Assembly (NCBI RefSeq): GCF_000150275.1
Contig: NW_002060943.1
Location: 574,531-638,530 of the forward strand
DNA from: Trichoplax adhaerens
Lineage: Eukaryota; Animalia; Placozoa
DNA length: 64,000 nucleotides
Reading direction: 5' to 3'
This document shows positions 1-25,343 of the stretch, in pieces. Position 1 is the stretch's first letter. Each line of letters begins with the position of its first letter. Below the pieces are notes generated by a model. The model had not been told where the DNA came from. It ran no database searches and saw only the letters and a list, made by a program, of their open reading frames with translations. The position numbers and the translations under genes were made by a program.

Positions 1-3000
1 CATCCACAGCAAATACTACAACAACGATAGTATCTCCAACTTCAGCAACGGCATCGGCAATAGCCAGTGCAACACAAGCAAGTAATCGAGCATCAGAACA
101 TCGTCGAAGGACTGAAGATATAACTAGGAGATTTAACGAGATTAAGAATGCTAATCGAGATAGCAAGTTAATGACAAAGGCCGCTAGCAATAATGCAAAT
201 CCTAATTTAAATACGAGTAATGAAGTAGTTAAAGCCACAAATGAACAAGCAGATAGCGATAGCAAAGTCAATTCTACTCATAAACATTCTAGAGTAGTTC
301 GTCAGGCTTCCTATCAGAATGGTCAGGAAGTTAAAAAATTACCGTTAACAAGAACCGATGGCTACTCATCCATAACCGTGCTAACTCAATCTGTTGATAG
401 TTCAAGTCAACGGCAGGAAATTGTAACTTCTGGTGCAACGAAAGTAGATAGTTCTGCCAATACTAATAACAACGCCAAACATGCTACCAGCCACAAGGAT
501 AGCCTTGCTAATGAACTTATCCACTCAAATGGTAACGGAAATCATGTTAATGACAAGATGAACAATATTATTGGTGATCATCTTCAATCTGCAAAATCAG
601 CTAATTCTCATAATAGCAATCATGCTACTGCTGATAGCAGTAATATCAATGTTAGTAATGATAAACCAAATTCGACTACAATTAAAATTGCATATAGCGA
701 TCAGTCTAGCTTTCATCATACGGATAATGCTATACCGGCAGTTAATGATAGCAAGGCCAACCAGAATACTCCCAATAATTTAAGTCATAGTCACCAGAAT
801 GAAGATCAGTCCAGCAGTAATGATAATCAAAATAATCAGAAACTTGGCTCGGTATCTAATAACACTAATTCAAATAGTACTATTAATAATAATAATTCTA
901 CCCTTACTAATAACAAGACTACATCAATACCTAAAATTGGTCGAAGTAGAAAATTACCCAGTATTGATTTAGCTGTTAAGAATGTATCTCCATCAAGACC
1001 GACATCATCGACAACTTCCATCTCTTCTGTTGCTTCCGATGGTATGGCTTTACCAACATCACCAATCGAATCTCCAGTTTCTCCTGTGTTTGTAACGCCA
1101 CCATCGACACCATTTGAAATAAAAGAGTCTTCCAATTTTACTTCTCCTTTAGCAATGATGGACAATTTTGAGATATCGGAAGTGGCTGCAGAGTCACGAA
1201 TTCAGAGTCCTCCATCCATAATGATCGAGTCTCATACTGGAGCATCCTCAGTATTTACTACTGCTCCATCATCGCCTGTTCAATCGCCTGGAGAAACATC
1301 AGCTCCAAGTCCACCAAATGTCCTAATAGAGCAAAATAAATTATCAGAAAGCGAGTCACTAGGAAATAATGAATATCCTAAATTACCAGCGCCACCACCA
1401 CCTACACCAGCTCAAGAATTATCATCAGCTCCAGTTTCCGATCAAGAGATCCAGAAACCAACATCGCCTGTTACTGATCAGGAGAGTCAGAAACCAACAT
1501 CTCCTGTTACTGATCTAGAAGAAGCGAAAACAACGGGTAAAATATCCAAATATGAAGTAGCTGATTTCTTTAGTCAATTTACATCGCAATCCAGTTTCCA
1601 GCTACGTTCCAAAAGGGCAAATAGTCTATCGTTAGCGACAGGAAGGGAAGAATCACCGAATGATGATGTGAAAGCACCAGAAAATCAACGAAGACGAATG
1701 ACCACAAGTGATCCTCGTTATATTGAAAGATTCAGAAATTTAAATAGGGATTCTTCAATAGAAAATAACCAAGAACGGATTGATGCAAAATCCACATCCA
1801 GTGATGATCATGAGGAAAAAGGTAGTGAACCGAAACAAACTTTACCTCGAATAATAATTACAGCACCAGATAGTGGCGATCGGAAGAAACGCCATAATAG
1901 AGCCATGAATCCGTATCATCGACGAAATCAAAAAGCTAAAAGTAAACGATCCAAAGAGCGACGGGAGAGAATAAGGCAAAATCGTGAAGACAAGCAAAGT
2001 AGTTTATCACCTACTAGTTCAGAAGATGAAAATAATCCGGCTAAGCAAAAAGACGTAACTAATTCCGTGTCAGCGGTAAATGCTCACTTTTTAAGTGTGG
2101 ATGATAGCGATTGGGTATCAGGCTGTTTAGGTAAAGATAGTGAATCGAGCTGTGATGAACATGATGAGAAAAAGAAAAAGAAAAAGGGTAGAAAGCATAA
2201 AAAAAGTAAATCCAATAAGGAATCCAAGAAGAAAACGAAAAAATCCAATCATAAGCATGAAGATTCTATTCCGCCTATGGATAAGGTTATTATATATTGT
2301 AAAATGTCATCAAACTACTTTGATAACTATAAAGACTTTATGAGTGTAAAAATTTCTAGAATAATTATTAACGGGTAGGATAGACGTTGGAGGATAGTAG
2401 AGAAATTAGTGCTGGTAATTCATTTCTTCTAAAGAAAATAAAGAGTAATTATTAATACGATCGTCGCATACGAAATAATTTAGAAATATTGTAATACGAG
2501 TATACGATTACTTTTAACCAATTCTTTTAGGCGCTATATTCTATATAATTATGTATAGTAATTCGAGCCACAATGTCCTAAAACTCTTTAGAGAACAAAA
2601 ATATAGTTTTTAATCAAGTGCATTATACATTTAATTCATATTCATTTTCATACTTTTTGAAAATGGTAAAATATTATAAAATAGTTTAGCTAATTCTTAA
2701 TGCTATATTTGTATGCTATATAATTTAGCAAAATTAATGCGACCACTTTTAGACAATTTTTGCTAGATATTACATTAAATGCAATATTTAGCAATTTAAC
2801 TACGGTATCCTACAATTTTCACAGACGCAGAAGTTTAACATACGCGTATAATGGATTGCATTAAATATTTATTTCTAAATCCTTATTTTGATGTCTTTAA
2901 ATATTCTATTAACATCAGAATGAAGAGGATGATATTATCATACAGGAAGAATTAGTGAAAATTGAAAATAATTCAGTGGCACCAGCTGAACACCCTGATG

Positions 3001-4253
3001 TATTCTTTGATTTTCAACTTAGTAGCTCAGTAATAAAATTATTAAAGCTACTGGTCAAAGAAGAAGACATAACTGGTAACACTAAAGTCTTTAATTTAAT
3101 TGAGACGAACTTGGCTGATGAGGAAGGCTTTTATCCTTTATTGGTAACTTTACAAAATCAGGTAATTGATTCTTAACATCGTGGGTATCATTGTTTATTT
3201 TTACATTTATCAGATCAAAAATATGGATTTAATATAGTAGAATATTAGTATTGGTAATATTAGCCATTTACTGTATATAGGCAAAATGTTTATCGATAAT
3301 CATTGTCCTCTTCCTGTGTAAATCTACCTTCGTTGGCTAGTATTGAATTATATAGGAAAGGAAAGCCGATATTAGTTTAATTGCTATTAGATAAGTTGCG
3401 ATAAATTAGCGTTAGTGCTTTTTAACCAGTCTCTTCATGATGACCTTACTAAATCTACTATAGACTAAAATTCTTGATCAATATTCTTGAATTGTTAATT
3501 GATATTCGATTTTTTTATACAGTATCAAGAAATTATCCAAGATCAAAATCATAACTTATCATTAGATAAGTATGACACAATCAAGGAACAGCTAGATTTA
3601 ATTAGCAATATTCGAGAGGCTACAGATAATTACATCGCCACGGATGGTATTAGCAACGAAATTGTCCAATTTCAAAAAGCAAAGAAAATTCAAGCTGAAC
3701 TGCAAGAGGTAATTATGATTGCCGGCGTTTAATAGAAGCCATTTATGCCTAGAAAATTGTACTTTACTTTAACTAAGACGTTCTAGTAGTGTAATTGACT
3801 ATATATCTACTTCATAAAGACATCGAATCTATCTATCAGCTTTTACAACACTAAAGTAATATATCAGTCACAGTCTACTTAATATCTTTTGCTAAACTAA
3901 CGTTACATATTAATTTATCGTATATAAATTTCAAGTTCTATTGATAGGCTACCAATTATGTGTCTTTGTTTATGTATAATATTCGACATTTTATTTATCT
4001 AGACTACTGGCTATTGCCATTTAAATAGTTTATCTATCTTGTTTATGACAAGTAGCAGCTTTATCTTTTACGAAGTGATTGGTTGATATAATTTATATAG
4101 TTTTATTTATTGTATGCTTTTCTCATAGTTTCTCTGTTTTATTCTTAGCTGTTAAACAGTTGTAGATATTATTTCCATGATAAGTGTCAAAATATTATTA
4201 CCGAAGTGATTGGCCATAGTCAGCTTCCAGCAGAATATTGTACACTATTATAA
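1..4253 (+). CDS. Large low-complexity protein with conserved C-terminal helical domain and CaaX (CTLL); paralogue A, 5' end outside window
   Basis: Frame is open from window start through ORF 171-2378. Hand-spliced exons: <1-2285 (AAG|gttatt), 2919-3161, 3523-3708, 4149-4253, all GT-AG and phase 0, ending ...HSQLPAEYCTLL*. The last three exons align with the neighbouring gene's exons 16791-17021, 17135-17320 and 17487-17582. Confidence 0.8.
1431..1520 (+). repeat. Coding 36-bp (12-aa) tandem repeat, PV(S/T)DQE(I/S)QKPTS x~2.5
   Basis: PVSDQEIQKPTS-PVTDQESQKPTS-PVTDLEE is visible in both protein and DNA. Confidence 0.75.
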
Positions 4254-7200
4254 CCAACCATGGCTCTTGCAAAGTAAGATATGGCTGCATTTATCCTACA
4301 AGATATTATTATTAGTAATAATCATGGTACCCACCCAACTCTAACATGTTAAGACACTACGGTAGTTGATAATTGGACATTGTTATCCCTCAATTGCATA
4401 TATCACTGATGAACTTCCTTCTCATCCTGTATATCACCTAGGACTAAGATAAACTAAATTAAATACTCGGACAATCTTATTTATTGCTATTATATAATTA
4501 TTACAAGGTTTTTAGGTGCATTTCTATTATCAAATGTTGCAGAACTGCAAAACATGAGGCTATCTGAAGCTTTCCATGGTGATTCATTTATAACAAGAAA
4601 TGAATTAACGGTAGTTCTAAGAAATCTAGATAGCAATATTATCTGAAATACCCATATGATTAATAGCGGTTGAAAGATGTAGACGATAATATTATCTGGC
4701 ATATCTACATTATTTTAAGTATGATCCTTGTACAAATATTCTAAATAGAGTAAGACGATCCTTGCCAGGCGTTACATTTTATGATTTCAACTATTAATCC
4801 ACTATAGTTAATCAATACTACACTTTACGTGCATCGCTGTTATTGATCACTTTCGCTATAATAGAATAAACGTGATATTTCAAAAAGCTATCAATCATCC
4901 ATTTAACTTGATCACATTACCCCATTAAAATCATTGTTAGTTTTACTTCATTAAGATATGATCAATAGCTGCATTTCTATCTGCTATACATGTAATAATG
5001 ATCTAGAAAAAAGCAGAATTTTTCAACCATGGATTGGTTTACTTAATAATGGAATAAACTTGTGGTACAAATATCTACCACAAACATCTACGTATTTGAT
5101 ACGTTCAAAGTGAAATTTCATGGTTGTATTTCATCTCATACTAGGCGCTATTTAGGCTTTAAGTTAATTATTTTCTCATTATTTACTTTTAAATGATTAA
5201 GCTAATATCACTGTTATACCTATGAGTACCATTTTGTATAATATTTGTAGAAAAGCAAATTTTGACAGTCGCTACGTAAAATATTCATTAGTAACAGAAG
5301 AGTTATTTCTGGGCCTATGTATATACCAATTGCAGGTCATTATTCTTGAATTAATTTATCTGAAACTAGCGATAATTTCCTACTACTATGTATTATTTTC
5401 GTTATAATACGTCAACAATTTTTAGCAACCTGCTTTTGCTTCTGTAATTGTGTGCGTTAAGCACATAATATTGTCCTGTAAAAAACTTTGGTAATATGTA
5501 TATGGTTTATAGGTACTGTTGATTACTAAATAGGCTTATGTTGATATTTTTAATTCGATTTGATATGTGGTAATAAATTCATCTTACGAGTTTATGCCAG
5601 AATAAAAAGATATTGCTTGGGTTTTGCTCTATTCAGTCTATATGCACGAACATATTGTAATTTTCATTCTTGTACTAACAGATACGGTACCTTGCTGAAG
5701 CAAGATCTAAAGTTTTATGCCGCTATCGTTCAATTTACTGTATGTAGAGATATTCAGAAAAGAGTAGCTTTAATATAGTGTAGAATTATTAGGAGAGTTA
5801 AGGCTACCTCTATATTATAATAAGATCGTAAGATTTTAAATTGTTCCATGATTATTTTATTCTCGTTCTGATATTGAAATAAAGTTTATTATTTTATGTC
5901 ATTATCGCTCAATTTATATTAGGAAGTAGAGAAATGAATAATTTTAATTTGCTGCAGCACAGGATCAAAAGAAGATCGTAAGGCTACCTAATTAATTATT
6001 TTAATCTCGCCCTGCCAGATACCGAAGCGTAGCGGTAGACTATAGTTTTACGTTATTCTCCTTCAATCAGGTATATGAAAAAATTCAGAAATAATTAATT
6101 TTAATCTATTACTATGTGGGATAATAAGAGAAATTGGGACTACCTACATATTATAAGATACGTATATAGGATGTTAATGGAATCCCTTATCTTACAAAGA
6201 TGATCATCCAATATTCTTCCGTGATCAGTGGCAATTACTGTAAATTGCATCATAAATTAAAGCATTTAAGAGCTTTGCTTTGGGCACTATACGTAAATTA
6301 CGGTGATATTGGGCGATGCTACGTGTGATTTATAATTAAGGCATTCATATCGAAAATTACACGACAAGGTATAGATTGAGATAAATTAAGAATATCTGCA
6401 CATATCCCAGAATTAAATTCAGAATTTTATCACGCTATTTACTTCATAATGTTACATGAATCCCGAAGATAAATCATTGCGGTATTAAGAAATAAGTATG
6501 GATAGTCTACTTCCAAAAATGAAAATGCAGAATTTAATTTTACCGCTATCGTTAAGTATGTAGTAATGAATCGTGACAATCTCCGGATTTTCATAAAACT
6601 AACACATTATCTATCGCTGACATGCCTATTGATAGCTGTCAGTAAATGACTAAAAATGTAGATATGCTATAAATTACGAATGAAAAAGGATTAAGTCAAG
6701 TTAACTTAGAACAGTGTTTCGTAAACATCGCATATAATTCTTTATCACGTTTAACGAATTGAGATGTAAGCGAAGCGTAATCTATCGCATTTACAAAATC
6801 TGCTTATAATCATTATCTATTAATCTATCCAACTCTTTTGATTTGCTTCAATTTTAATTTGGAAACCCGATAGGTATATCGATAATCTGCAAATAATTGA
6901 CTAGCGACTAATTTGTTCACATCTTTTCAATTGCTTAGATTTTGATATAGACTGAGAAAGCGAACAAACCATTAAATCCGCTTATAATTATTTAATCTGT
7001 CCAATTCTCTTTTACTGATCTAAATTTTAAAATGCGATAAAATGAACATATGTGCCTATGTTAACCTTGATATACTACCTGCACTCTCTAGTTATCGTTC
7101 CGTGATTAATTAACTGGAACGTATATCTAGCAGACGAATAGTCGTAAGTTAGATGTACAATAGGTATTGATACTACGCGATTTTATCCTATATCTCTTAT

Positions 7201-8366
7201 ATTTAACTAGGACGGCTAAGTTAGACGTGTAGAATATTGTAGCTTAGGTATAACAAAACAGTTGGTACAAAAATTACTAGTATAACCAATTACTTTAATA
7301 TAACAGTTGTTGCTATGTTTTCATCGGCTCTATAACATTTCTGGATGGTATTTTTTTGACAAATTATAACATTTCATTTAGGAAGAGCATATTAATTCAT
7401 GATTCGGTAATATCTCCGAGAATTATCTTGGGGAAATTTCATGACTTTATGAAGCAAATTTTAAGTTGAATATAGGATCCGTAATAGAGAAGAAAAATCT
7501 AGTATAATGAAAATACATAATACTGCGCCATTATAAATTATTTTTCAACGTATAATTTGTTTGTCTACTGTATATGTACAAATCAGTATTAAGATAGGAC
7601 AATCACGATCATAATTACTACCAGTATGATTCTCCTTATATCTACATTTTGCTGCGGTAATTGAAATTCAATAAATGGTGATATTTAGTCTTTCCTTTTT
7701 GTAAAATTACCTACATGAAGTACCACACGATTATCGTAAGATTTACTATAGTGTCAATGAATACTTTACTTCCCTACTGATTTTCATCTATGAACATACC
7801 AGTGGTTAGAATAGTTCAGTTATTTACTAATAGTGTTATATTATTTACTAGCAATTGTATTATTGAATTTCATGATCAGTCTCTTAGCAGTCCAGTTCTT
7901 TCCAACAGCAGGGCACTAACGCCTATTGTTCCCTTAAGCTATAATGGCGGACTGCCGCTGTGACTTGGTAGTTCCAATCCGATTATTATGAATTCTTCTT
8001 ATTTACTCACTACTCTAGCATTCATACTAAAACACCATCAAAACAAGATATTAAAGGCACTACAATCAAAATGATTTATTCATTTGACGTTATAATAATC
8101 AAGTTATTTTATGAAAACTGACAGTGGTATATACGACCGAGATTCAGGCATGTTGGAAACCCAAAAGGAAAAGATTTCGTCTTTGCTTCCAACGTATTTG
8201 CTATATAAGTAGACAAGTAGACTGAATAGTTTATTTGATGACTATTCCCATATTTTCCTATCAGAATTAACTTGAATCATTTTTCTTAAAGTATTTATTC
8301 TATGAAAGACTTGATTTATTTCTTTATTTAAATCTTTCATGATCATCTATTTGAAAAAGTTTATCC

Positions 8367-8517
8367 ATGTCAGATTATGATAAGATTCATTTTCGTGCCC
8401 CTACTCAATTGCGGAAATTACTAGTTGATTTCAGTTTACATTGCCTATATTATCAACCAAGCGATTTATACCAATTTGCTGCTTCTTATTTTCAACGGCA
8501 AGTCGAACACCAACAAG
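8367..8517 (+). CDS. Exon encoding RIIa D/D-like domain
   Basis: PTQLRKLLVDFSLHCLYYQPSDLYQFAASYFQR matches the RIIa/SPA17/CABYR/ROPN1 pattern P.gL..LL..F...vL..QP.Dl..FAa.YF. Donor CAAG|gtagga. Confidence 0.8.
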
Positions 8518-11500
8518 GTAGGACAGCAATAGTAGATGCTATTATACCTATATCGAAGAGAAGCGAATACTTATTGATTTGGTTAGGCTTAGAAAGGATA
8601 GTTTGGATTGAATTTGATATCTTGCTCGCCTTTTGGCACTAGAATAGTTACTGTATGAAAGGATGGATTATTTTAATTTTGGACTAATAATCTTAATTTT
8701 TATGATGATTGAATATACGCTAGGATTTATTATGATTGAATATTGATGACTGTGATAATATACTAGAATGATTTTGGTCACTTGTTGTCCTTCAATAACA
8801 AGATTGTTACATACGTGATTTTGGTTGTCTTTAGTTCATCTTGTTAGACCAACGGTATTTAAACGCATTCATTTTATTCATTATAAATTAGGAAATTGAA
8901 TAAGTAGCGTACAGTAGTTTAGGTAAAGAAATGTTAAAGAGTAATGGCGCTAAATTAGATTTCTATTTAGTCCTAGTTGTGATTGCACTGACAAGTTTAC
9001 GCTATATCAGTTTTCGTCCGCTTTGTTCGTAGACAATCATAGTGCTATTTTTTCTATTGCGGGTTTATTTAAGAGACGGTAGCAATTTTATATTGTTAGC
9101 CAACAATTACTGTCTATTTTTTATTCTATTCCTTTTTCATCTACACCCCAGTATAGCAACAGCGTGTTAAAAGTATGATGATGGGCTACAGTAACCCTAT
9201 TGGATTAATGGCTGTTCGTATTGCTTAGACTAATAGTGATGTTCAATACTTTTCGGCAAAGTTGTGAAACTGCGCGATCATATCTAATAGTCTACGCGAA
9301 GTTTCAATACTATGCTGGATATCAATTTAAACGGAGGATTGGATAGAAAGTAGTATTTAAAAAAATGTATCTACTAATTATATTACTGTACGTGAGTGGT
9401 GATTTACGCGTAGAAGAAAGAGTTAATAGTTGATATAAATAGTTGATATCAATATAAGTGATAGATTTTGATAGAAGATTGTCTGAAACTTATCATCATG
9501 TTGACTTGATATTTGCATAAGATACTGGATATCAATTTAGAATCATGTTGATTTAATAGAATAGTATCTACAACTTGCTGGTCATATCAACTGGATATTT
9601 GGATACTGTACGACATTTGATGTTGATTTAGATTAAAAAAAAATGTGAAATTAATGGAACATAAATTGGTTAAAACCACTTTGAACCTTTTCCAATTCTA
9701 CAAGAATATTCCATATAACTTAATTAAAATACAATTTAATACTCCTCTACCATACTCAGAATTTAAGAAACATATTAGTCTGTTATATAAAAACAGAACT
9801 TTACATAGCTGTCTGCTACTGCCTTTTACAAACAGAGTAGGAATCGGACAAGCACACTATTGCATTATGCTGGCCATCTTGATCCAAAATTACTTTATTA
9901 AGCATAAAAGACTATTCTACATCTCATCATCTTTACTCCATTCTACTGTTGCACTTTCAATACTTATTATTGCCATCATACCCCAAATTTACTATCTCTA
10001 ACGAAGAATTGGAAATATTACCGCCATTATGTAGAGACATGGAGTGCTTTTAAATTTTTGATCACGTACCATCTGAACAGAATATGATTTCGACGAGCGA
10101 TAGAGTAAACCTAATATTCTTTAGCCAAATGGAATCATTTTTCTTTCAATCATATTCTAGAATTGATAATATGGATAGACACGAATGATAGCCAACATAG
10201 TCTACCGTACTTTCTCCTATTTGAATAGTATAAATTGATTTGGCTGAGATACAGTAAGACAGAAACGATATTTTGATCGCTATTTTTCCATGGCATTTAT
10301 TTGGCAGTATCACTTAATATTGCCATTATTAACTAGTTTAAAGGCTGAAGGAATTCTATTAATGAACTGCTACCTATCGTATTTTATACTAACTTTTAGA
10401 GAAAAGTTCCATTGCCGACGGCAAAATATCGAAGCAAAATGGAACACTTTTCCCTGGGCAAAAGTGGAGAAAGGAACACAACATGTGGGCATTTCATTGC
10501 TACGTTCATAAGGATGCCAGACAAACCTTCTATGATGCCATGTATGAAAGTATTTTCAATCAGGAACTACTTATGCCTCACAGTATGGATGGATTTTACT
10601 CGTCGAAAATGACAGATATACCATTTAAAAGATATACTAGGGCAGTTTATCATGGTTATTCCCCTTTACCAGCAAATAGAGATTCATTAACACCAGTAGA
10701 AAGTAATGATATGGACGGGAACCGCTGCTATGTAAGTAGAGCTCCTATGTTCACAAAGCAAGATCATGATGGAACTATTCATGAAGGCAGTAATCAATAT
10801 CTTAAGGAAGTTTTCATAGAGAAAATTCAACAGAATATCAGTAAAGATGACGAAGAAGATCCTAATAGAAATGATCCCGTATTTCAAACTATCAGCCATC
10901 AAAACGGTGAAAGACATAATCAATATTTCTTGCTAACAGCAAGCAATACAGAGAAAAATGAGAATCAGCCATCTATTCAGAATAGACCAAAATCTCTTGA
11001 TTCGCATAAGGATATTGATCAGCAGAATGATATCCAAAGTTATGTCGACACAGATTTAAAAAGTAAATATCAAGCAGAAGCAGACCCTAAACAAAATAAA
11101 ATTCAAGATCTTACCGATACTGGAGAAGAATGTCAGTCTCTTATTGCGGCAAAGCCTACAACTAGAAGAGATGGAATTGAAATTGATAATGTTAAAATGA
11201 CGAATGAAATCGATCATTCCGATTGTAGTGATATTTCGGCAGTTAAAACCCCTGAAAAAACCACGAAGAAAATTCAAGAATCCTTTCAAATGGAGGAAAA
11301 TGAAGGAAAAGATCCTTTATCGAATAATACAAACAAGGAAATCAACGCTAAAGATTCGGCCAAGAATAAAACGAATACCAATACTGCAAAGAGAGTAGCA
11401 GCGAATGGACGGAAAACGCCATTTAAGGGCAGCCAAGGACATCGAAAAGTCAGCAACGAAGAGCCAATCTTGAAGAATCCAAAGCATCAAGGAAATCAAG

Positions 11501-14500
11501 ATGTCAAATTGCAGAGAAAGAAAGAGTATACGTCTAAGACGGTTGTTCCAGTTCAGAATGCTACCAGTAAATACAAAATCCCCAATAAATTGATCGATAG
11601 CAAGAGCAAGAAAGGAAGGCAAGATAGCGTTCAGTCCACCGATACTCTAACAACTCCATTGAATAAGAGAACTACCGGTGAAAAGGCTGAAGGAAAGAAA
11701 GAAAATCTTAAGGTAAAATGGCATAAAATCTATGAAAAAATTATTCAAATAGAAGAAGAAAAGACTTTACAAGACAAACCGAGAGAAAATACAGTTCATA
11801 AATTACCGCTGAAAAGACAAAACGGCACCGGGAAAACTCAAGGTGAGAATAAGCCAAGAAATTTATCTCTAAATGCAGGCAAGAAAGTGAATATCAAGGC
11901 ATTTGATCGAGAAATACAGCGAAAACAAGAACACTTGTCTAACAGGGAGAAAAAGCGAACGTTTAATAAAAACTATAAAAGTTTAAATCTTGAGAAAAGT
12001 CAAGATAATAACGCAAAGCAGTCTACCCCTGCAGTAGGTATAAGTAAGAATAATAATGAGAAAAAAACACTAGCTAGTAAAATAGCATTAACTAGTTCTC
12101 AGAAGCATCTTCAATCTAAATTAGAGAATAGTGATCGTCAGGCTGTATACCCTGTAAATGATCTTGAAAATACTGATAATGGCACAGAACATGATAGAGA
12201 AGAAGGAAATCTTTTAGAAAAGCCAAGTCATGTCTTGGAGGGAAGTGAAAGGGAGAACTATCGGAAAGAAGTTGTTCATGCTCACCCGTCTTCAAGTTCG
12301 TTGCTCTTGGAAGAAATAACGCAAAATGATGATATTCTATTACAAAATGAGGACAGAGAAGAAAGTGTGCGAGACTGTCCAGAAGTGGAGTCGGAGGAAA
12401 GTGAAAGGGAGAGCTATCGGAAAGATACTGTTCATGCTCACGCGTCTTCAAGTTCGTTGCTCTTGGAAGAAATAACGCAAAATGATGATACTCAATTACA
12501 AAATGGGGACAGAGAAGAAATTGTGCAAGGCTATCTAGAAGTGGAGTCGGAGGAAAATGAAAGGGAGAACTATCGGAAAGATGTTGTTCAAGCTCACGAG
12601 TCTTCAAGTTCGTTGCTCTTGGAAGAAATAACGCAAAATGACGATACGAGTATTCTATTGCAAAATGAGGACAGAAAAGAATCTGTGCGAGACTCTCTAG
12701 AAGTGGATACCCACAATTATGGAAGTAAGAATATCAATACCAATGATTCTAGCCAAGGCAGTGCATTGGAGAACACTTTCGAAAGCAGCCTTAAAGTGAA
12801 CGAAATACAAAATTTAGAGATGAAAGATAAGGGAAAAGAAGTTCTTCTTAACGTGCAAGATGACATCAAGTCAGAGCAACAACATCAATCGAATTCGTTC
12901 ATTCAGCCAGCGAAAGAGATCAATTTATTAGAGGCTAATGTAAACCATGATATCAAGCTTACTCCGCACGAAAATGAAACTTGTGTTTTGCCAAAATCTC
13001 AAGAAATTTCAAAGGTAGATGCTAAGCAGTATTTGACCATTTTAAATTCACTGAAACAAATCAACAAGACCGAACAAATCGATGAGAATAAGCCTAAATC
13101 GAAAGGAATGAAAAAGTTATCCTCTGTCTCAGGTAGTTCTATACTTCAAGAAGAAGAAGAAGACAGCATGACTCAGAAATCAAAAATGGTTAAAAAATTA
13201 CCTCATGTTCCAGTCAATTTAGAATCTAAAATGATGATGGAAAGACACAAGAAAGGTACCGGTATTGATAGGAGCCAAAATCGATTAAGTAACAAGAATG
13301 AGAATAAGTTGAAAAGTAAGGCAAATGTTGAGAATACTGCCAATGGAGGTCGTTTAGCCAAGCAGGCTAATGAGATTCTCAAAGCAAGAATTCGCACTTA
13401 TTCTGATGCTTCTCATTACAAGAAAAAGTCTACATCAGCTGGTAATGTTATGCCATCTAAAGTAGTTCAAAATAAAGATCACCCACCGAGTCATAATGAG
13501 ATGCTGCTATATATTAAGAATAAACTAATCAAGAAAGGAGAATCAATCGGTAGTAATAATCTACTGGATAAAAAGAATCCAAGTATCCATGATAACAAGA
13601 ACAGAAGCATAAATGGTGTCCAAAGTGCTAATGCGGATCAAAACTATTCCAATGGAGTAGAAAAATCGATCGGTAATCATTTCAAGAAGTCCGCAGTTAA
13701 CGATGAAACTGGAATACCAATCCGTGAAAAAGAGATAGTTAATTGTGCTCATGAAGTGATGGATGGCGAGAATTTTAATTCTAATAGTCCTAGCAATCCA
13801 AATGAACTAGCCACAATCTCCGTAATTGCAGAAACATCTAATTTAAAGAACTTAAATTCTACTTTAGCTGCAAGCGAAGATCAGCCAGGGATTATGAATA
13901 CTTTAAGCAACAATGATGGTCAAGATCAAGACAACTTACATCGCAATTTCGCAAAGGAGGACAGTACGAAGGTAGTAAACAATTTAGTTCAAACTATGGA
14001 TAAATCAGAGCAATTGATAGCGTTGATAAACAGCGATATTAGTACATTAGAGGATACCAGAAATCGGCCAGTAAAACATAATTCCTGTGTAGCAGATGTG
14101 AGAGATGCCGATAGCAATATTGCAATATCGCCAGTTGATCGCAATATCCCTATAATCCCCCTGGATAGTAAGAGTAATAAACTTGAAAGTACTCCAAAAG
14201 CAGATTTATTGCCAAAGTTTCTAGATTCGATCAAATTGACTACAGAACAGCTACCAAGTTATCAAGGCATTCACCATGGAGAATATCGCCTTGAACAGGA
14301 AAATCAGAAGCAAGTTCCAATGACGAGCTTCCATAAAAAGGATCTTTCAGAGAAATCGAGCTGCGATAGCTACAGCAATGGAACAGAACTATCCAAGGAA
14401 TTAATTCAATCTGCACCGGCAGATCCAGCATCAGCTGAGACAAAAAGCCACATGCCTTCTACGAACAATTGGATCGAGAATCTGCGAAATGCAAACATCG

Positions 14501-17500
14501 CTGATCTTCCTACCTTAAGAAGCGAAAATTTAGAAAAATGTGTCCCTTCAGCTTCTAAACATACCTGTACCGAGCTAAACTATGATAGAAATCTTGCAAG
14601 TCCTACTATAATTTCCAATGATGCAGCTGAAATAATGAATGGATCCGAGCCTAATAAGGACGTTAATCAAGTAAGATGGGAACAGAAATCTTTAACCGAT
14701 CATGATGAGGGCAAAGAAGAGCAATTCTTAGGCCAAGATAAAGAACGTTCGGATGGAGTAGAATTAGTTCGGCATCAAATTGATAGAGATCTACAGTCTA
14801 AACAAGAATTTACCCTTTCAGCTTCACCTGCAAATTCTACTAAATTTATTAGAAATATTCCCTCTACCATCCCTAATACTAGTGCAAATAGAATAGCATA
14901 TCAGACTATGATCTCAGGAGAAGGTATTAATGTAGATGATTTTAAAGACGATTATCAACCCTGCCCACTCGGTTCCTGCATAGATAATTCTTCGATCGAG
15001 AATACTTCAGTTCATGATGATGTAGTTTATGAAGTTCAAGGTAATCAAACTAGTCAAGAATAGCTAAAGTATCTTGCTGCTATAAAGAATAGTGATGCTA
15101 ATATTGATTGAATATCTTTACGTTCTGTTCAACAGGAATAAATGAGTCTGCCAAGTCCGTTGTACAAATCAGCAGAGAAATTTCAAGTAATGCCAATATT
15201 ACTCATTCGTCCTTGGAATCAGACATACTTCAACATAGTGAAGCTTCTAATGATATAGACAGGAATCAATATCTACAGCCAATTCATATGGTGGACAAGA
15301 TCGATGACGAGATTAGAAATAAGGCGTTAGGAAAATCCCAATCTCAAACTTCCGAAGGAAGCAACACTGTCGGAATAAATGATAGACAAGAAGACACAAA
15401 CTATGGGCAAAAAGGCGTTAATACAAATAACTTTATAAAAATCTCTCAAATTCAAAATGAAAATTCAAATCAGGAAGTAGGTGATACCAGGGTACAAGAA
15501 GAGAAAGAATCGAATATCAAGGCAGAAATACGGATTGAGAATACTATTAAGGTACAGATTGATGATAGGAGGGATGGCTCAATTGGAAATGAAATCAATC
15601 CTAACATTAACCTACGAGACCAGAAGCCAAGCAATCAAAAATTTCAAAAGGCAAAAGAGGCTGAGAATAATAAGCCATTGCATATTAGTTCTAATCTTGC
15701 AGTTGATGATGCATCCAAGAATAACCCAGTTTCGAATGTTGCTGAGGATAGTGAGAATAATGACATCGAAAATGTAGACATTAATGTAGAATTAATGAAT
15801 GAAGCATCTAATAAAGTTGGGGAACAGAAATTACCAACTAATATTGGTCCTAATGCAAAGACTATGAAGAAAGAAGGAAACTTAGATTTTGGGATGGATT
15901 TGAAGTTAGAATCTTATGTTCAAGACATGAAGATCAAGAAAGAAAGTGCCATCGCTTCAGCAAAAAAAGCTGTCAAGAGTTCCTACATCGATCAAAAACA
16001 AAACCAATTGGAAAGAGAGAAGATAGAGAATGTGCATGCTAACCCACATCAGGTACATAAAGAAACAGAAACAATCTTCCCTTCCACGGCGGATATACGG
16101 GTATCATCGCTTATGAAGGGGGAAAAGCAGAATGGTAACGATGAGATGGTTTCTACTGCTGCCTTGCTATTGCCTCAATGCAATAATCAAGATAGTTGTA
16201 CTGAACAGCCGAAAGAAAGCAACCATGATTCTGAGATTAAGCTGATTGAGCGAGAAAAGTACAGTAAGGAAGTGAATGATGATAATATGCTAATAAAGCA
16301 TTCATCGTACAAAGACACCATAAATACTGATATGTTAAAAGAAGATTTTTCAAGCGTGGACATTACTCAAAATAAGCAGGATCGTTGTCAAAATGATACA
16401 AGTACTAATGCTAACGATTTGGAATCAGAATCAATTGGCCAAGGTTTTCGTGATGAAGAAGAAGAGGAAGTAAGCACATCAGTAGAGAATACAAAGAAGA
16501 AACATCGTAGCCATCGTCATGGCCATAGTAAACGAAAAGATGGTAAGAAACACCGCAAAAAACATCGAAAAGAGAAAACTTCTAATTCTCATCACCATAA
16601 GGTCAGCTTAAAATAATTAGAAGTAAATCTTGTATTTCTTACAAGCTAGTCGACTTTTCTAATGGTGTATAGAAACTATGGTTTACATATTTATTATAGC
16701 TCCTGTCTGCAATATTGTTAATACAATTACAGCGTTTCTATTCTAAATTAATGATAGAAATAATTTTGAAATGCTGTACCGGTAATATAGGGAAGTCTGC
16801 TAGAATCGATCATAGAAGAAGATGAAGATGTAGCAATAGAGCCAGAAACAAGGAAATCAACTGATTTTTATGTAGAGCCTGATCATGAAGTAGCAAAACT
16901 TATAGGAAAATTAATCTGCAATGAAGAAATCGATGAAGACAGCGATGTTGAGCAAGATATTGAATCTATTATTTACGATGATGAAATATTTTACCCACTA
17001 ATTAATGCCTTAGTCTCAAAGGTAGGATATCATTGTTAAAAAAATTAATAAGTAAACAGTTAAAATTGTAAAATCATAAAACATTCGAACGCATTGATTT
17101 TAATATAGCATGCTCTTATGTTTTGTATTATTAGTATGAAAGCATCGTTGAGAATAAATTAAGCGATTTTTCCAGCAATGATCAAGAACTTATTGAAGGA
17201 CAGTTTCAATCATTTCAGGAAATATTAGCTACAGCAGATAAATGTTGGTCAGCATACCATGCTGGTAATGATTTTGAGGTTTTAGAGAATATCAGGAGAC
17301 TTAAAAGCACATTAATTGAGGTAAGTTGACGACCAAAAAACTAATCAATTCGACTAGCTATTGAACCATTTACGTACTTTATTAGTAATGTTAGAAAGTG
17401 AAAACGATTTAACATGGTCTAGTTGTAAGAAAATTTTCTTAACCTTGATCTTACTGAAGTTGCGAATGGCTCTATTCCATTTGTAGTTGATAGATGAAAA

Positions 17501-17582
17501 TTATATCCATCAAGATGGCCTTAGTATAATTAGTAATACTATTGGAAAATCTCGTGTGCCGAAGAATTGTATAATTTTATAA
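8367..17582 (+). CDS. ~2256-aa protein: N-terminal RIIa (PKA-RII dimerisation/docking)-like domain, long disordered body, conserved C-terminal domain, CaaX (CIIL); paralogue B
   Basis: Exons 8367-8517, 10400-15040, 15136-16601, 16791-17021, 17135-17320, 17487-17582. All GT-AG with matching phases (1,1,0,0,0); total 6771 nt = 2257 codons with no internal stop. A TACTAAC branch-like motif precedes the 10400 acceptor. Confidence 0.8.
12238..12707 (+). repeat. Coding tandem repeat, 3 x 156 bp (52 aa)
   Basis: Three copies of E.SERE.YRK..V.AH.SSSSLLLEEITQNDD..LQN.DREE.V....EVES at 156-bp spacing, highly similar at DNA level. Confidence 0.9.

Positions 17583-18378: not shown

Positions 18379-25343
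<6,965 letters not shown>

What the first reader, a model, noticed from the sequence alone, without database searches (positions are those of the whole stretch)
1..17582. Tandem pair of a possibly undescribed family: giant disordered, prenylated proteins with a shared C-terminal domain
Seen: once spliced, the two genes share the same order of parts. Each has a long low-complexity exon, an acidic then Lys/His-rich patch, a phase-0 intron, three small phase-0 exons (81/77 aa, 62/62 aa with both exons exactly 186 nt, 34/31 aa) and a Cys-aliphatic-aliphatic-Leu stop. The small exons align: V(I/A)KL(L/I)..L(V/I).(E/N)E(D/E)I...IE....D(E/D)E.FYPL(L/I)..L | Y..I(I/V).......QL/QF...I....D...(I/L)...L.E | L...Y.H.....II...IG.S.(L/V)P...C..L. 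I see no similarity between the large disordered bodies. Inference: an old tandem duplication of a membrane-anchored scaffold family with a conserved C-terminal module and a fast-evolving body. I do not recognise it as any named family.
Basis: partly seen in the sequence, partly recalled or inferred. Interest (0 to 1): 0.85.

Follow-up and report, generated by a model that had tools for sequence, protein, structure and literature searches.

The report
Placozoan lipid-tailed disordered protein pair
Two neighbouring Trichoplax genes encode very long, mostly unstructured proteins that share only a conserved helical end-piece with a lipid-attachment signal; the pair is real, expressed and so far seen only in placozoans, but its function is untested.

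Summary
The window is Trichoplax adhaerens DNA. Gene A (public model, 1526 aa) and gene B (public models, 2178 and 2256 aa) lie in tandem on the + strand. Each ends with an acidic then Lys/His-rich patch, a phase-0 intron and three phase-0 exons (81/77, 62/62, 34/31 aa), closing in CTLL or CIIL.

The two annotated proteins align only over their last 171 residues (25% identity, E 3e-12). Each exon pair beats shuffled controls.

A divergent placozoan keeps both gene types with the same exon structure and a CVIL end. There the module is 54-87% identical, against 28-50% for the disordered bodies.

Pfam, PDB sequences, the ESM Atlas and a full HMMER pass over 1.84 billion representatives (exon s1 profile) give no relative outside placozoans. 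Gene B starts with an R2D2-type RIIa docking/dimerisation exon; gene A has none.

Best reading: a placozoan-restricted pair of geranylgeranyl-anchored disordered scaffolds, one carrying a D/D dimeriser. Lipid attachment, location and partners are inferred only. Both genes are already deposited as "hypothetical protein", so the novelty is moderate. The scan had noted the same stretch twice more; nothing on other DNA.

The parts
1..2285 (+). Gene A, 3' part of the long disordered exon. The exon begins upstream of the window at G000:C1414:573327 (= L006:3327) and is 1163 codons in all.
   Evidence: Open frame. Matches public model P0004. RNA contigs cover 1900-2285.
2094..2258 (+). Gene A acidic patch (2094-2165) followed by Lys/His-rich patch (2166-2258).
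   Evidence: Conserved in the divergent placozoan contig L009.
2919..3161 (+). Gene A exon s1 (81 aa, phase 0): acidic linker plus the first three helices of the shared module, with the FYPL motif.
   Evidence: RNA joints on both sides. AF2 helices at 36-46, 55-65 and 71-80, low confidence.
3030..3065 (+). Gene A conserved amphipathic helix VIKLLKLLVKEE. It is the only match in the protein to the published AKAP RII-binding pattern.
   Evidence: A lead only; binding not shown (one search gave no verdict).
3523..3708 (+). Gene A exon s2 (186 nt, 62 aa, phase 0).
   Evidence: RNA joints 3161>3523 and 3708>4149. 87% identical in L009 with dN/dS 0.02. AF2 predicts a long helix, pLDDT 82.
4149..4253 (+). 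Gene A exon s3 (34 aa plus TAA). The CaaX box CTLL is at 4239-4250.
   Evidence: RNA joint.
4274..4507 (+). Optional GT..AG intron in gene A's 3' UTR, starting 20 nt after the stop codon.
   Evidence: Loose ends at 4275 in four runs match 4510-4539. Other contigs run straight through.
8367..8517 (+). Gene B exon 1: RIIa docking/dimerisation domain of R2D2 type. The donor is in phase 1.
   Evidence: Pfam RIIa 25.3 bits against a cut-off of 22.4. Joined to exon 2 in public model P0002. PxxL loop and YF motif match the criteria in PMC8339350.
10400..15040 (+). Gene B exon 2, long disordered exon. Contains a 156-nt x 3 tandem repeat at 12237-12707.
15136..16601 (+). Gene B exon 3, the second disordered exon, after a 95-nt phase-1 intron. 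It ends with an acidic patch (16443-16493) and a Lys/His patch (16494-16601).
16791..17021 (+). Gene B exon s1 (77 aa). The conserved helix VAKLIGKLICNE is at 16890-16925.
   Evidence: 65-73% identical in L007.
17135..17320 (+). Gene B exon s2 (186 nt, 62 aa).
   Evidence: 71% identical in L007.
17487..17582 (+). Gene B exon s3 (31 aa plus TAA). The CaaX box CIIL is at 17568-17579.
   Evidence: The orthologue in L007 ends in CVIL.

Best explanation
These are two tandem paralogous genes of Trichoplax adhaerens, and the family has so far been detected only in placozoans.

Each gene encodes a long, polar, low-complexity and probably disordered body of about 1150-2000 residues. The body runs into a conserved acidic then Lys/His-rich patch. 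It ends in an all-helical module of about 145 residues plus an acidic linker, spread over three phase-0 exons and closing in Cys-aliphatic-aliphatic-Leu.

Most likely mechanism (inferred, not shown):
- The CaaL box is geranylgeranylated by GGTase-I, trimmed and methylated, which pins the C-terminus to a membrane.
- The nearby helical module is the conserved working or binding part.
- The polybasic patch adds electrostatic membrane affinity, or else nuclear targeting.
- The disordered body acts as a long flexible tether or scaffold.

Gene B also begins with an R2D2-type RIIa docking/dimerisation domain. It should therefore dimerise and offer a groove for an amphipathic helix of a partner. Gene A lacks this head.

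Shown here: gene structure, splicing of gene A, paralogy, purifying selection on the module, lineage restriction at HMMER sensitivity, and presence of the RIIa domain and of the prenylation enzymes in the genome.

Inferred: lipidation, location, dimerisation and the scaffold role.
For: - Gene structure and public models.
- RNA joints for gene A in four studies.
- Paralogy: s1 E 7e-7; shuffle z 8.2, 3.3-4.3 and 5.8-6.3; whole proteins E 3e-12 over 171 aa only.
- Two copies only in the genome.
- Orthologues of both types in a divergent placozoan, with the same exon sizes (s2 = 186 nt) and a CVIL end.
- Small-exon dN/dS is 0.02-0.26, and their dN is 2.5-6 times lower than the body's.
- In the three s3 sequences in hand, Cys at -4 and Leu at the end are invariant (CTLL, CIIL, CVIL). 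From established knowledge these are canonical GGTase-I substrates (compare RhoA CLVL, Cdc42 CVLL).
- Three prenyltransferase beta-subunit loci and ICMT are present in the genome.
- RIIa is above Pfam's cut-off, with the PxxL and YF hallmarks of the R2D2 class.
- Helical predictions for s1 and s2.
- The module is 39-40% hydrophobic, the bodies 24-27% hydrophobic and 31-39% S/T/N/Q.
Against: - No experiment or computation here shows lipidation, membrane binding or dimerisation.
- The polybasic patch sits about 170 residues from the CaaX box, not next to it as in K-Ras-type anchors. It may instead be a nuclear localisation signal.
- The whole module could not be folded, so its fold and any remote homology are unknown.
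- Only exon s1 went through the exhaustive HMMER search. More distant relatives of the module may exist in other animals.
- Gene B's splice joints were not checked with reads.
- The RIIa hit of the Trichoplax sp. H2 protein is below Pfam's cut-off when the whole protein is scored (18.9 bits).
Confidence: 0.6

Rival explanations
1. Nuclear-envelope proteins. The Lys-rich patch is a nuclear localisation signal. Together with the CaaX lipid it targets the proteins to the inner nuclear membrane, as in lamins or Drosophila Kugelkern. There the disordered body would contact chromatin or shape the envelope.
For: - A dense conserved K/R/H run about 170 residues upstream of the CaaX box.
- That spacing resembles the NLS-to-CaaX layout of lamins more than a K-Ras-type polybasic anchor (my own knowledge).
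- The bodies are polar and charged.
Against: - Known nuclear CaaX proteins are farnesylated (X is not Leu). Here X is Leu in all three sequences.
- There is no lamin rod or Ig fold, and no Pfam hit.
- RIIa domains are known from cytoplasmic and ciliary complexes (PMC8339350).
Confidence: 0.2
2. Self-contained anchoring pair. The conserved amphipathic helix in exon s1 of both paralogues is an AKAP-type docking helix. It binds the RIIa dimer of gene B, or PKA-RII or another R2D2 protein. A and B would then assemble head-to-tail into a membrane-bound network.
For: Each protein has exactly one match to the AKAP RII-binding pattern. In both it is the homologous, conserved s1 helix (VIKLLKLLVKEE and VAKLIGKLICNE). 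The helix is kept in the divergent orthologues. AF2 predicts it as a helix.
Against: - The pattern is loose: about one match per shuffled protein is expected.
- The helix may be buried inside the module.
- No binding evidence of any kind was obtained.
Confidence: 0.12
3. The C-terminal CaaL is not used as a lipid signal. The module would be a soluble protein-binding domain, and the terminal Cys..Leu would be conserved for structural reasons.
For: Prenylation was not tested. Residues upstream of the box can block prenyltransferases (general knowledge; compare PMC10590752, listed).
Against: The Cys at -4 and the terminal Leu survive about 75% sequence divergence between the paralogues and are kept in the orthologue. 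The a2 position is always Leu or Ile. The stop codon follows at once in all three.
Confidence: 0.08

Closest known systems
Non-PKA R2D2 docking/dimerisation proteins (SPA17, ROPN1/ROPN1L, CABYR, RIIAD1, CATIP)
   Same: Gene B has an N-terminal RIIa domain of type II, with the Pxx[LIV] loop and YF motif, followed by non-kinase sequence. CABYR likewise carries a long low-complexity tail.
   Different: None of the 18 superfamily members listed in PMC8339350 has a CaaX box, a 2000-residue body or this C-terminal module. Gene A has no RIIa at all.
Lipid-anchored disordered AKAP scaffolds (AKAP12/gravin, Drosophila Akap200, AKAP18alpha)
   Same: A long, charged, largely disordered scaffold with polybasic patches and a covalent lipid anchor. 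A conserved amphipathic helix fits the RII-binding pattern.
   Different: In those proteins the anchor is N-terminal myristate or palmitate, not C-terminal geranylgeranyl. They carry the docking helix, not the RIIa domain. No sequence similarity was found.
Disordered or rod-like CaaX proteins (lamins, Drosophila Kugelkern, paralemmins, RPGR constitutive isoform ending CTIL)
   Same: A large non-globular body, a basic patch and a C-terminal CaaX box. RPGR and these proteins share a CaaL-type, geranylgeranyl-specifying end.
   Different: No Pfam or sequence match to any of them. Lamins and Kugelkern are farnesylated. None has an RIIa head or the FYPL-containing helical module.

Membership tests
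RIIa / R2D2 docking-dimerisation domain superfamily (gene B only) | Match to Pfam RIIa (PF02197) above the gathering score | tested here: met
   Exon 8367-8540 scores 25.3 bits against a cut-off of 22.4. Genome-wide six-frame scan gives 25 bits, over the cut-off. The H2 orthologue scored as a whole protein gives only 18.9 bits.
RIIa / R2D2 docking-dimerisation domain superfamily (gene B only) | Type II hallmarks: Pxx[L,I,V] loop between the helices and a YF motif in helix II (PMC8339350) | tested here: met
   The sequence reads ...YYQPSDLYQFAASYFQRQ....
RIIa / R2D2 docking-dimerisation domain superfamily (gene B only) | Forms a dimer that binds an amphipathic helix | tested here: inconclusive
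   The complex prediction gave no verdict. This needs biochemistry.
RIIa / R2D2 docking-dimerisation domain superfamily (gene A) | Presence of an RIIa domain | tested here: not met
   No RIIa hit in P0004. None on the contig upstream of gene A at E up to 10.
CaaX substrates of geranylgeranyltransferase I | Cys at -4, aliphatic a2, Leu (or Phe) as the last residue, directly followed by the stop codon | tested here: met
   CTLL (4239-4253), CIIL (17568-17582), and CVIL in L007.
CaaX substrates of geranylgeranyltransferase I | Processing enzymes encoded in the genome | tested here: met
   Three prenyltransferase beta-subunit loci and ICMT. Which locus is GGTase-I was not resolved.
CaaX substrates of geranylgeranyltransferase I | Lipid actually attached | not testable with these tools
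   Needs metabolic labelling or mass spectrometry.
A-kinase anchoring proteins | Amphipathic helix fitting the RII-binding pattern | tested here: met
   One match per protein, at the homologous s1 helix. About one match per protein is also expected by chance.
A-kinase anchoring proteins | Binds the D/D dimer of PKA-R or an R2D2 protein | tested here: inconclusive
   One search gave no verdict. The proteins are not filed as AKAPs.
Lamin / Kugelkern-type nuclear CaaX proteins | Farnesyl-type CaaX (X not Leu), plus a lamin rod and tail domain for lamins | tested here: not met
   X is Leu in all three sequences. No intermediate-filament or lamin-tail Pfam hit.

The most novel reading that the evidence does not exclude
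A PKA-independent anchoring system built from the two paralogues. Gene B would be a geranylgeranyl-anchored R2D2 protein. Its D/D dimer, held on a tether of about 2000 disordered residues, would capture the conserved AKAP-like helix in the C-terminal module of gene A and of other B molecules. The result would be a membrane-bound meshwork unique to placozoans. It would be the first protein known to unite an RIIa head and a CaaX tail.
Probability: 0.1. Interest if true: 0.7.

Novelty: new variant of a known kind. Interest (0 to 1): 0.42.

Why it matters
If the reading holds, placozoans have a lineage-restricted family of lipid-anchored disordered scaffolds with an unnamed helical end-module. One member joins two parts I found together in no paper I could search: an RIIa docking/dimerisation head and a geranylgeranyl tail.

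That would add an architecture to the D/D-domain superfamily, which is otherwise tied to PKA and cilia. It would also give a concrete, small and testable module for asking how an animal without neurons or muscles organises signalling at membranes.

The work also corrects two public gene models. The JGI model of gene B lacks its RIIa exon. The Trichoplax sp. H2 model of gene A skips a strongly conserved, expressed exon.

The genes themselves are already deposited, and no function is shown.

Tried and rejected
- Complex prediction of two copies of gene B's RIIa domain (residues 1-55) with gene B's module (residues 2110-2256). No verdict (score 0.02), so it counts neither for nor against binding.
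- ESM Atlas on the gene A module: no usable hit.
- Pfam on all exons and on both whole proteins: only RIIa.
- PDB sequence search with four-sequence profiles of s1 and s2: nothing below E 0.2.
- Word-indexed protein search restricted to P0001's C-terminal 170 residues (candidates of 0.55-1.75 times its length): only itself.
- HMMER hit to Hydra protocadherin Fat1 (E 4.8e-4, no matched stretch passing on its own): taken as spurious.
- RFX X-box search near gene B's promoter as a test of a ciliary role: matches at chance level, none convincing.
- Cell-type expression look-up in the supplements of PMC10580291: the gene number was not found in the stored, truncated files.
- Gene identifiers in the paper library: no paper.
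- Exact-sequence contig look-up for P0001: not on record.
- Three tandem RIIa exons on another contig, checked as possible further giant relatives: they are ordinary small genes without long exons.
- Left out: folding and Foldseek of the joined module of about 170 residues, and profile searches with the joined module. The joined sequence exists only inside database proteins longer than the 1200-residue limit, so no reference could be given. I searched exon by exon by reference, and used the database proteins by id where the tools allowed.
- The low-confidence s1 model and the single-helix s2 model were not sent to fold search because matches would be meaningless.
Full report
**What the window is.** The long exon of gene B retrieves, at 100% identity, the NCBI/UniProt entry 'uncharacterized protein TRIADDRAFT_51309 [Trichoplax adhaerens]' (P0001, 2178 aa). 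The window is G000:C1414:574531-638530 of a 105.6-Mb assembly. This is an animal genome with spliced genes, and the ORF tools are only guides.

**Checking gene A.**
- Its long open frame runs off the window's left edge. It starts at an acceptor at L006:3327 (genome 573327) and ends at 2285 in phase 0, 1163 codons in all.
- Three phase-0 exons follow: 2919-3161 (81 aa), 3523-3708 (186 nt, 62 aa) and 4149-4250 plus stop (34 aa...CTLL).

**Checking gene B.**
- The long coding region is 10400-15040 plus 15136-16601, split by a 95-nt phase-1 intron, and ends at 16601 in phase 0.
- It is followed by 16791-17021 (77 aa), 17135-17320 (186 nt, 62 aa) and 17487-17579 plus stop (31 aa...CIIL).
- Both long exons end with an acidic run and then a dense Lys/His run.

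**Public gene models.**
- The JGI model of gene B (P0001) and the Trichoplax sp. H2 model (P0002, TrispH2_006741, 2256 aa) use exactly these joints.
- The JGI-type model of gene A (P0004, 1526 aa) also uses exactly these joints.
- The H2 model of gene A (P0003, 1505 aa) skips exon s2.

**RNA evidence.** I laid contigs of four runs from four studies on 1900-4500.
- All four show GT..AG joints 2285>2919 and 3161>3523.
- Three show 3708>4149. The fourth has loose ends whose letters are the start of s3 and the end of s2.
- No contig joins s1 directly to s3, so in these data s2 is part of the message and the H2 model is short by one exon.
- The same contigs reveal an optional 234-nt intron in the 3' UTR (4274-4507), 20 nt after the stop.

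**Is the similarity real?**
- Exon by exon, s1 aligns at E 7e-7.
- s2 and s3 are too short and diverged for BLASTP alone.
- All three cognate pairs beat 5000 shuffles: z 8.2, 3.3-4.3 and 5.8-6.3. They also score above every non-cognate exon pair.
- The two database proteins, compared whole, give one significant alignment. It is colinear over the last 171 residues: 25% identity, 50% positives, E 3e-12. Nothing else falls below E 1.
- The bodies are indeed unrelated in sequence, though alike in composition: 31-39% S/T/N/Q and 24-27% hydrophobic, against 39-40% hydrophobic in the module.

**How far the family reaches.**
- A six-frame profile search of the whole genome finds only these two copies of s1.
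- An exhaustive HMMER search with the s1 profile over 1.84 billion representative proteins returns the two Trichoplax proteins and two short ORF calls, P0005 and P0006.
- It also returns one hit to Hydra Fat1 with no matched stretch, which I discount.
- P0005 and P0006 lie on 2.8-3.9-kb contigs from a sequencing run and from metagenomes (L007-L010).
- L007 carries a gene-B-type 3' end. It has a Lys/His patch, s1 (75 aa), s2 (again 186 nt) and s3 ending CVIL, with good splice sites.
- L009 carries a gene-A-type end with s1 (80 aa) and s2 (186 nt). The contig stops before s3.
- These are orthologues from a clearly diverged placozoan, with synonymous distance at or near saturation (dS 0.9-3.5).
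- There the small exons are 54-87% identical, with dN 0.07-0.35 and dN/dS 0.02-0.26. The bodies are 28-50% identical, with dN 0.45-0.85.
- So the duplication predates that split. The module is under clear purifying selection, and the body evolves several times faster.
- No relative outside placozoans appeared in Pfam, PDB sequences, the ESM Atlas or the length-restricted word search.

**What the parts look like.**
- AF2 on s1 with four sequences has low confidence (pLDDT 55). It leaves the first 31 acidic residues unstructured and predicts three short helices. The first is the conserved V(I/A)KL(L/I)..L(V/I) helix, and the last starts at the invariant FYPL.
- s2 alone is predicted as one long helix (pLDDT 82). 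A conserved Gly/Asn position in the middle may make it a hairpin in context.
- The invariant columns of s3 are Y, H, I, IG, S, P, the Cys at -4 and the last Leu.

I did not fold the joined module. That step is left out.

**The RIIa head.**
- Gene B's first exon (8367-8517) matches Pfam RIIa above the cut-off.
- It is joined in phase 1 to an acceptor at 10400 in the H2 model. The JGI model misses it.
- It has the Pxx[LIV] loop (PSDL) and the YF motif that PMC8339350 gives as hallmarks of the type II (R2D2) class.
- It resembles other Trichoplax R2D2-type exons.
- Gene A has no RIIa, either in its models or anywhere upstream on the contig at E up to 10.

**Mechanism.** From established knowledge, a C-terminal Cys-a-a-Leu with an aliphatic a2 is the signature of geranylgeranyltransferase I substrates.
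- The box has survived about 75% divergence between the paralogues and is kept in the orthologue.
- The genome encodes three prenyltransferase beta subunits and ICMT.
- I therefore think it most likely (about 0.65) that both proteins are lipid-anchored by the C-terminus. The helical module would sit at the membrane and the disordered body would reach into the cytoplasm.
- Gene B would in addition dimerise through its D/D domain and dock on an amphipathic helix of a partner.
- None of this was tested.
- The basic patch lies about 170 residues from the lipid site, which fits a nuclear localisation signal at least as well as a membrane patch. A lamin- or Kugelkern-like inner-nuclear-membrane role is therefore the main rival (0.2), although those proteins are farnesylated.

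**A lead, not a finding.** Each protein contains exactly one match to the published AKAP RII-binding pattern. In both it is the conserved s1 helix. The pattern is loose, with about one match expected per shuffled protein. A complex prediction of the RIIa dimer with the module gave no verdict.

**Comparison and verdict.**
- Gene B passes the tests I could run for the R2D2 D/D superfamily. It matches none of that superfamily's 18 named members in architecture.
- Both proteins pass the sequence tests for GGTase-I substrates.
- They resemble lipid-anchored disordered AKAP scaffolds, and disordered CaaX proteins such as Kugelkern, paralemmin or RPGR, in design only.
- I found no paper naming these genes and none describing an RIIa-plus-CaaX protein.
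- The finding is real and tidy: an unnamed, placozoan-restricted module with an unusual domain combination.
- It is nonetheless a pair of already deposited hypothetical proteins with no functional data.

**Earlier notes of this scan.** The same stretch was noted twice more (RIIa plus CaaX; hidden terminal exon). I found no note of this family on other DNA.

Noticed in passing
window 3523-3708 (gene A exon s2): The public Trichoplax sp. H2 model of gene A (P0003) skips this exon. RNA contigs of four studies include it, and it is the best-conserved exon (87% identical in a divergent placozoan). The H2 model appears to be one exon short.
   Followed up: yes
window 8367-8517: The JGI model TRIADDRAFT_51309 starts at the ATG at 10483 and lacks the RIIa first exon and 27 codons of exon 2, both of which the H2 model includes.
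   Followed up: partly
window 4274-4507: An optional GT..AG intron in gene A's 3' UTR, starting 20 nt after the stop codon. Spliced and unspliced contigs coexist. One contig carries about 1.1 kb more sequence beyond the gene A part laid here, so the 3' UTR may be long.
   Followed up: partly
window 12237-12707: Three tandem copies of a 156-nt (52-aa) unit inside gene B's disordered body, 88% alike. Gene A has a smaller 36-nt x 2.2 repeat at 1440-1519.
   Followed up: no
G000:C1411:1741750, 1751479 and 1760155 (L011, L012): Three RIIa-type first exons in tandem at about 9-10-kb spacing on one strand. They belong to ordinary small-exon genes and have no long disordered exons.
   Followed up: partly
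window 18505-19058, minus strand: Short ORFs just after gene B read like exons of a glycerol-kinase-type (FGGY) sugar kinase on the opposite strand. This is judged from memory of the family's motifs only.
   Followed up: no
L006:2590-2754 (gene A upstream exon): A 55-aa phase-0 exon in the N-terminal part of gene A (...DDMEVAQIVTRGLSDHLDFD...) looks like a short acidic amphipathic helix. It has no Pfam match.
   Followed up: no
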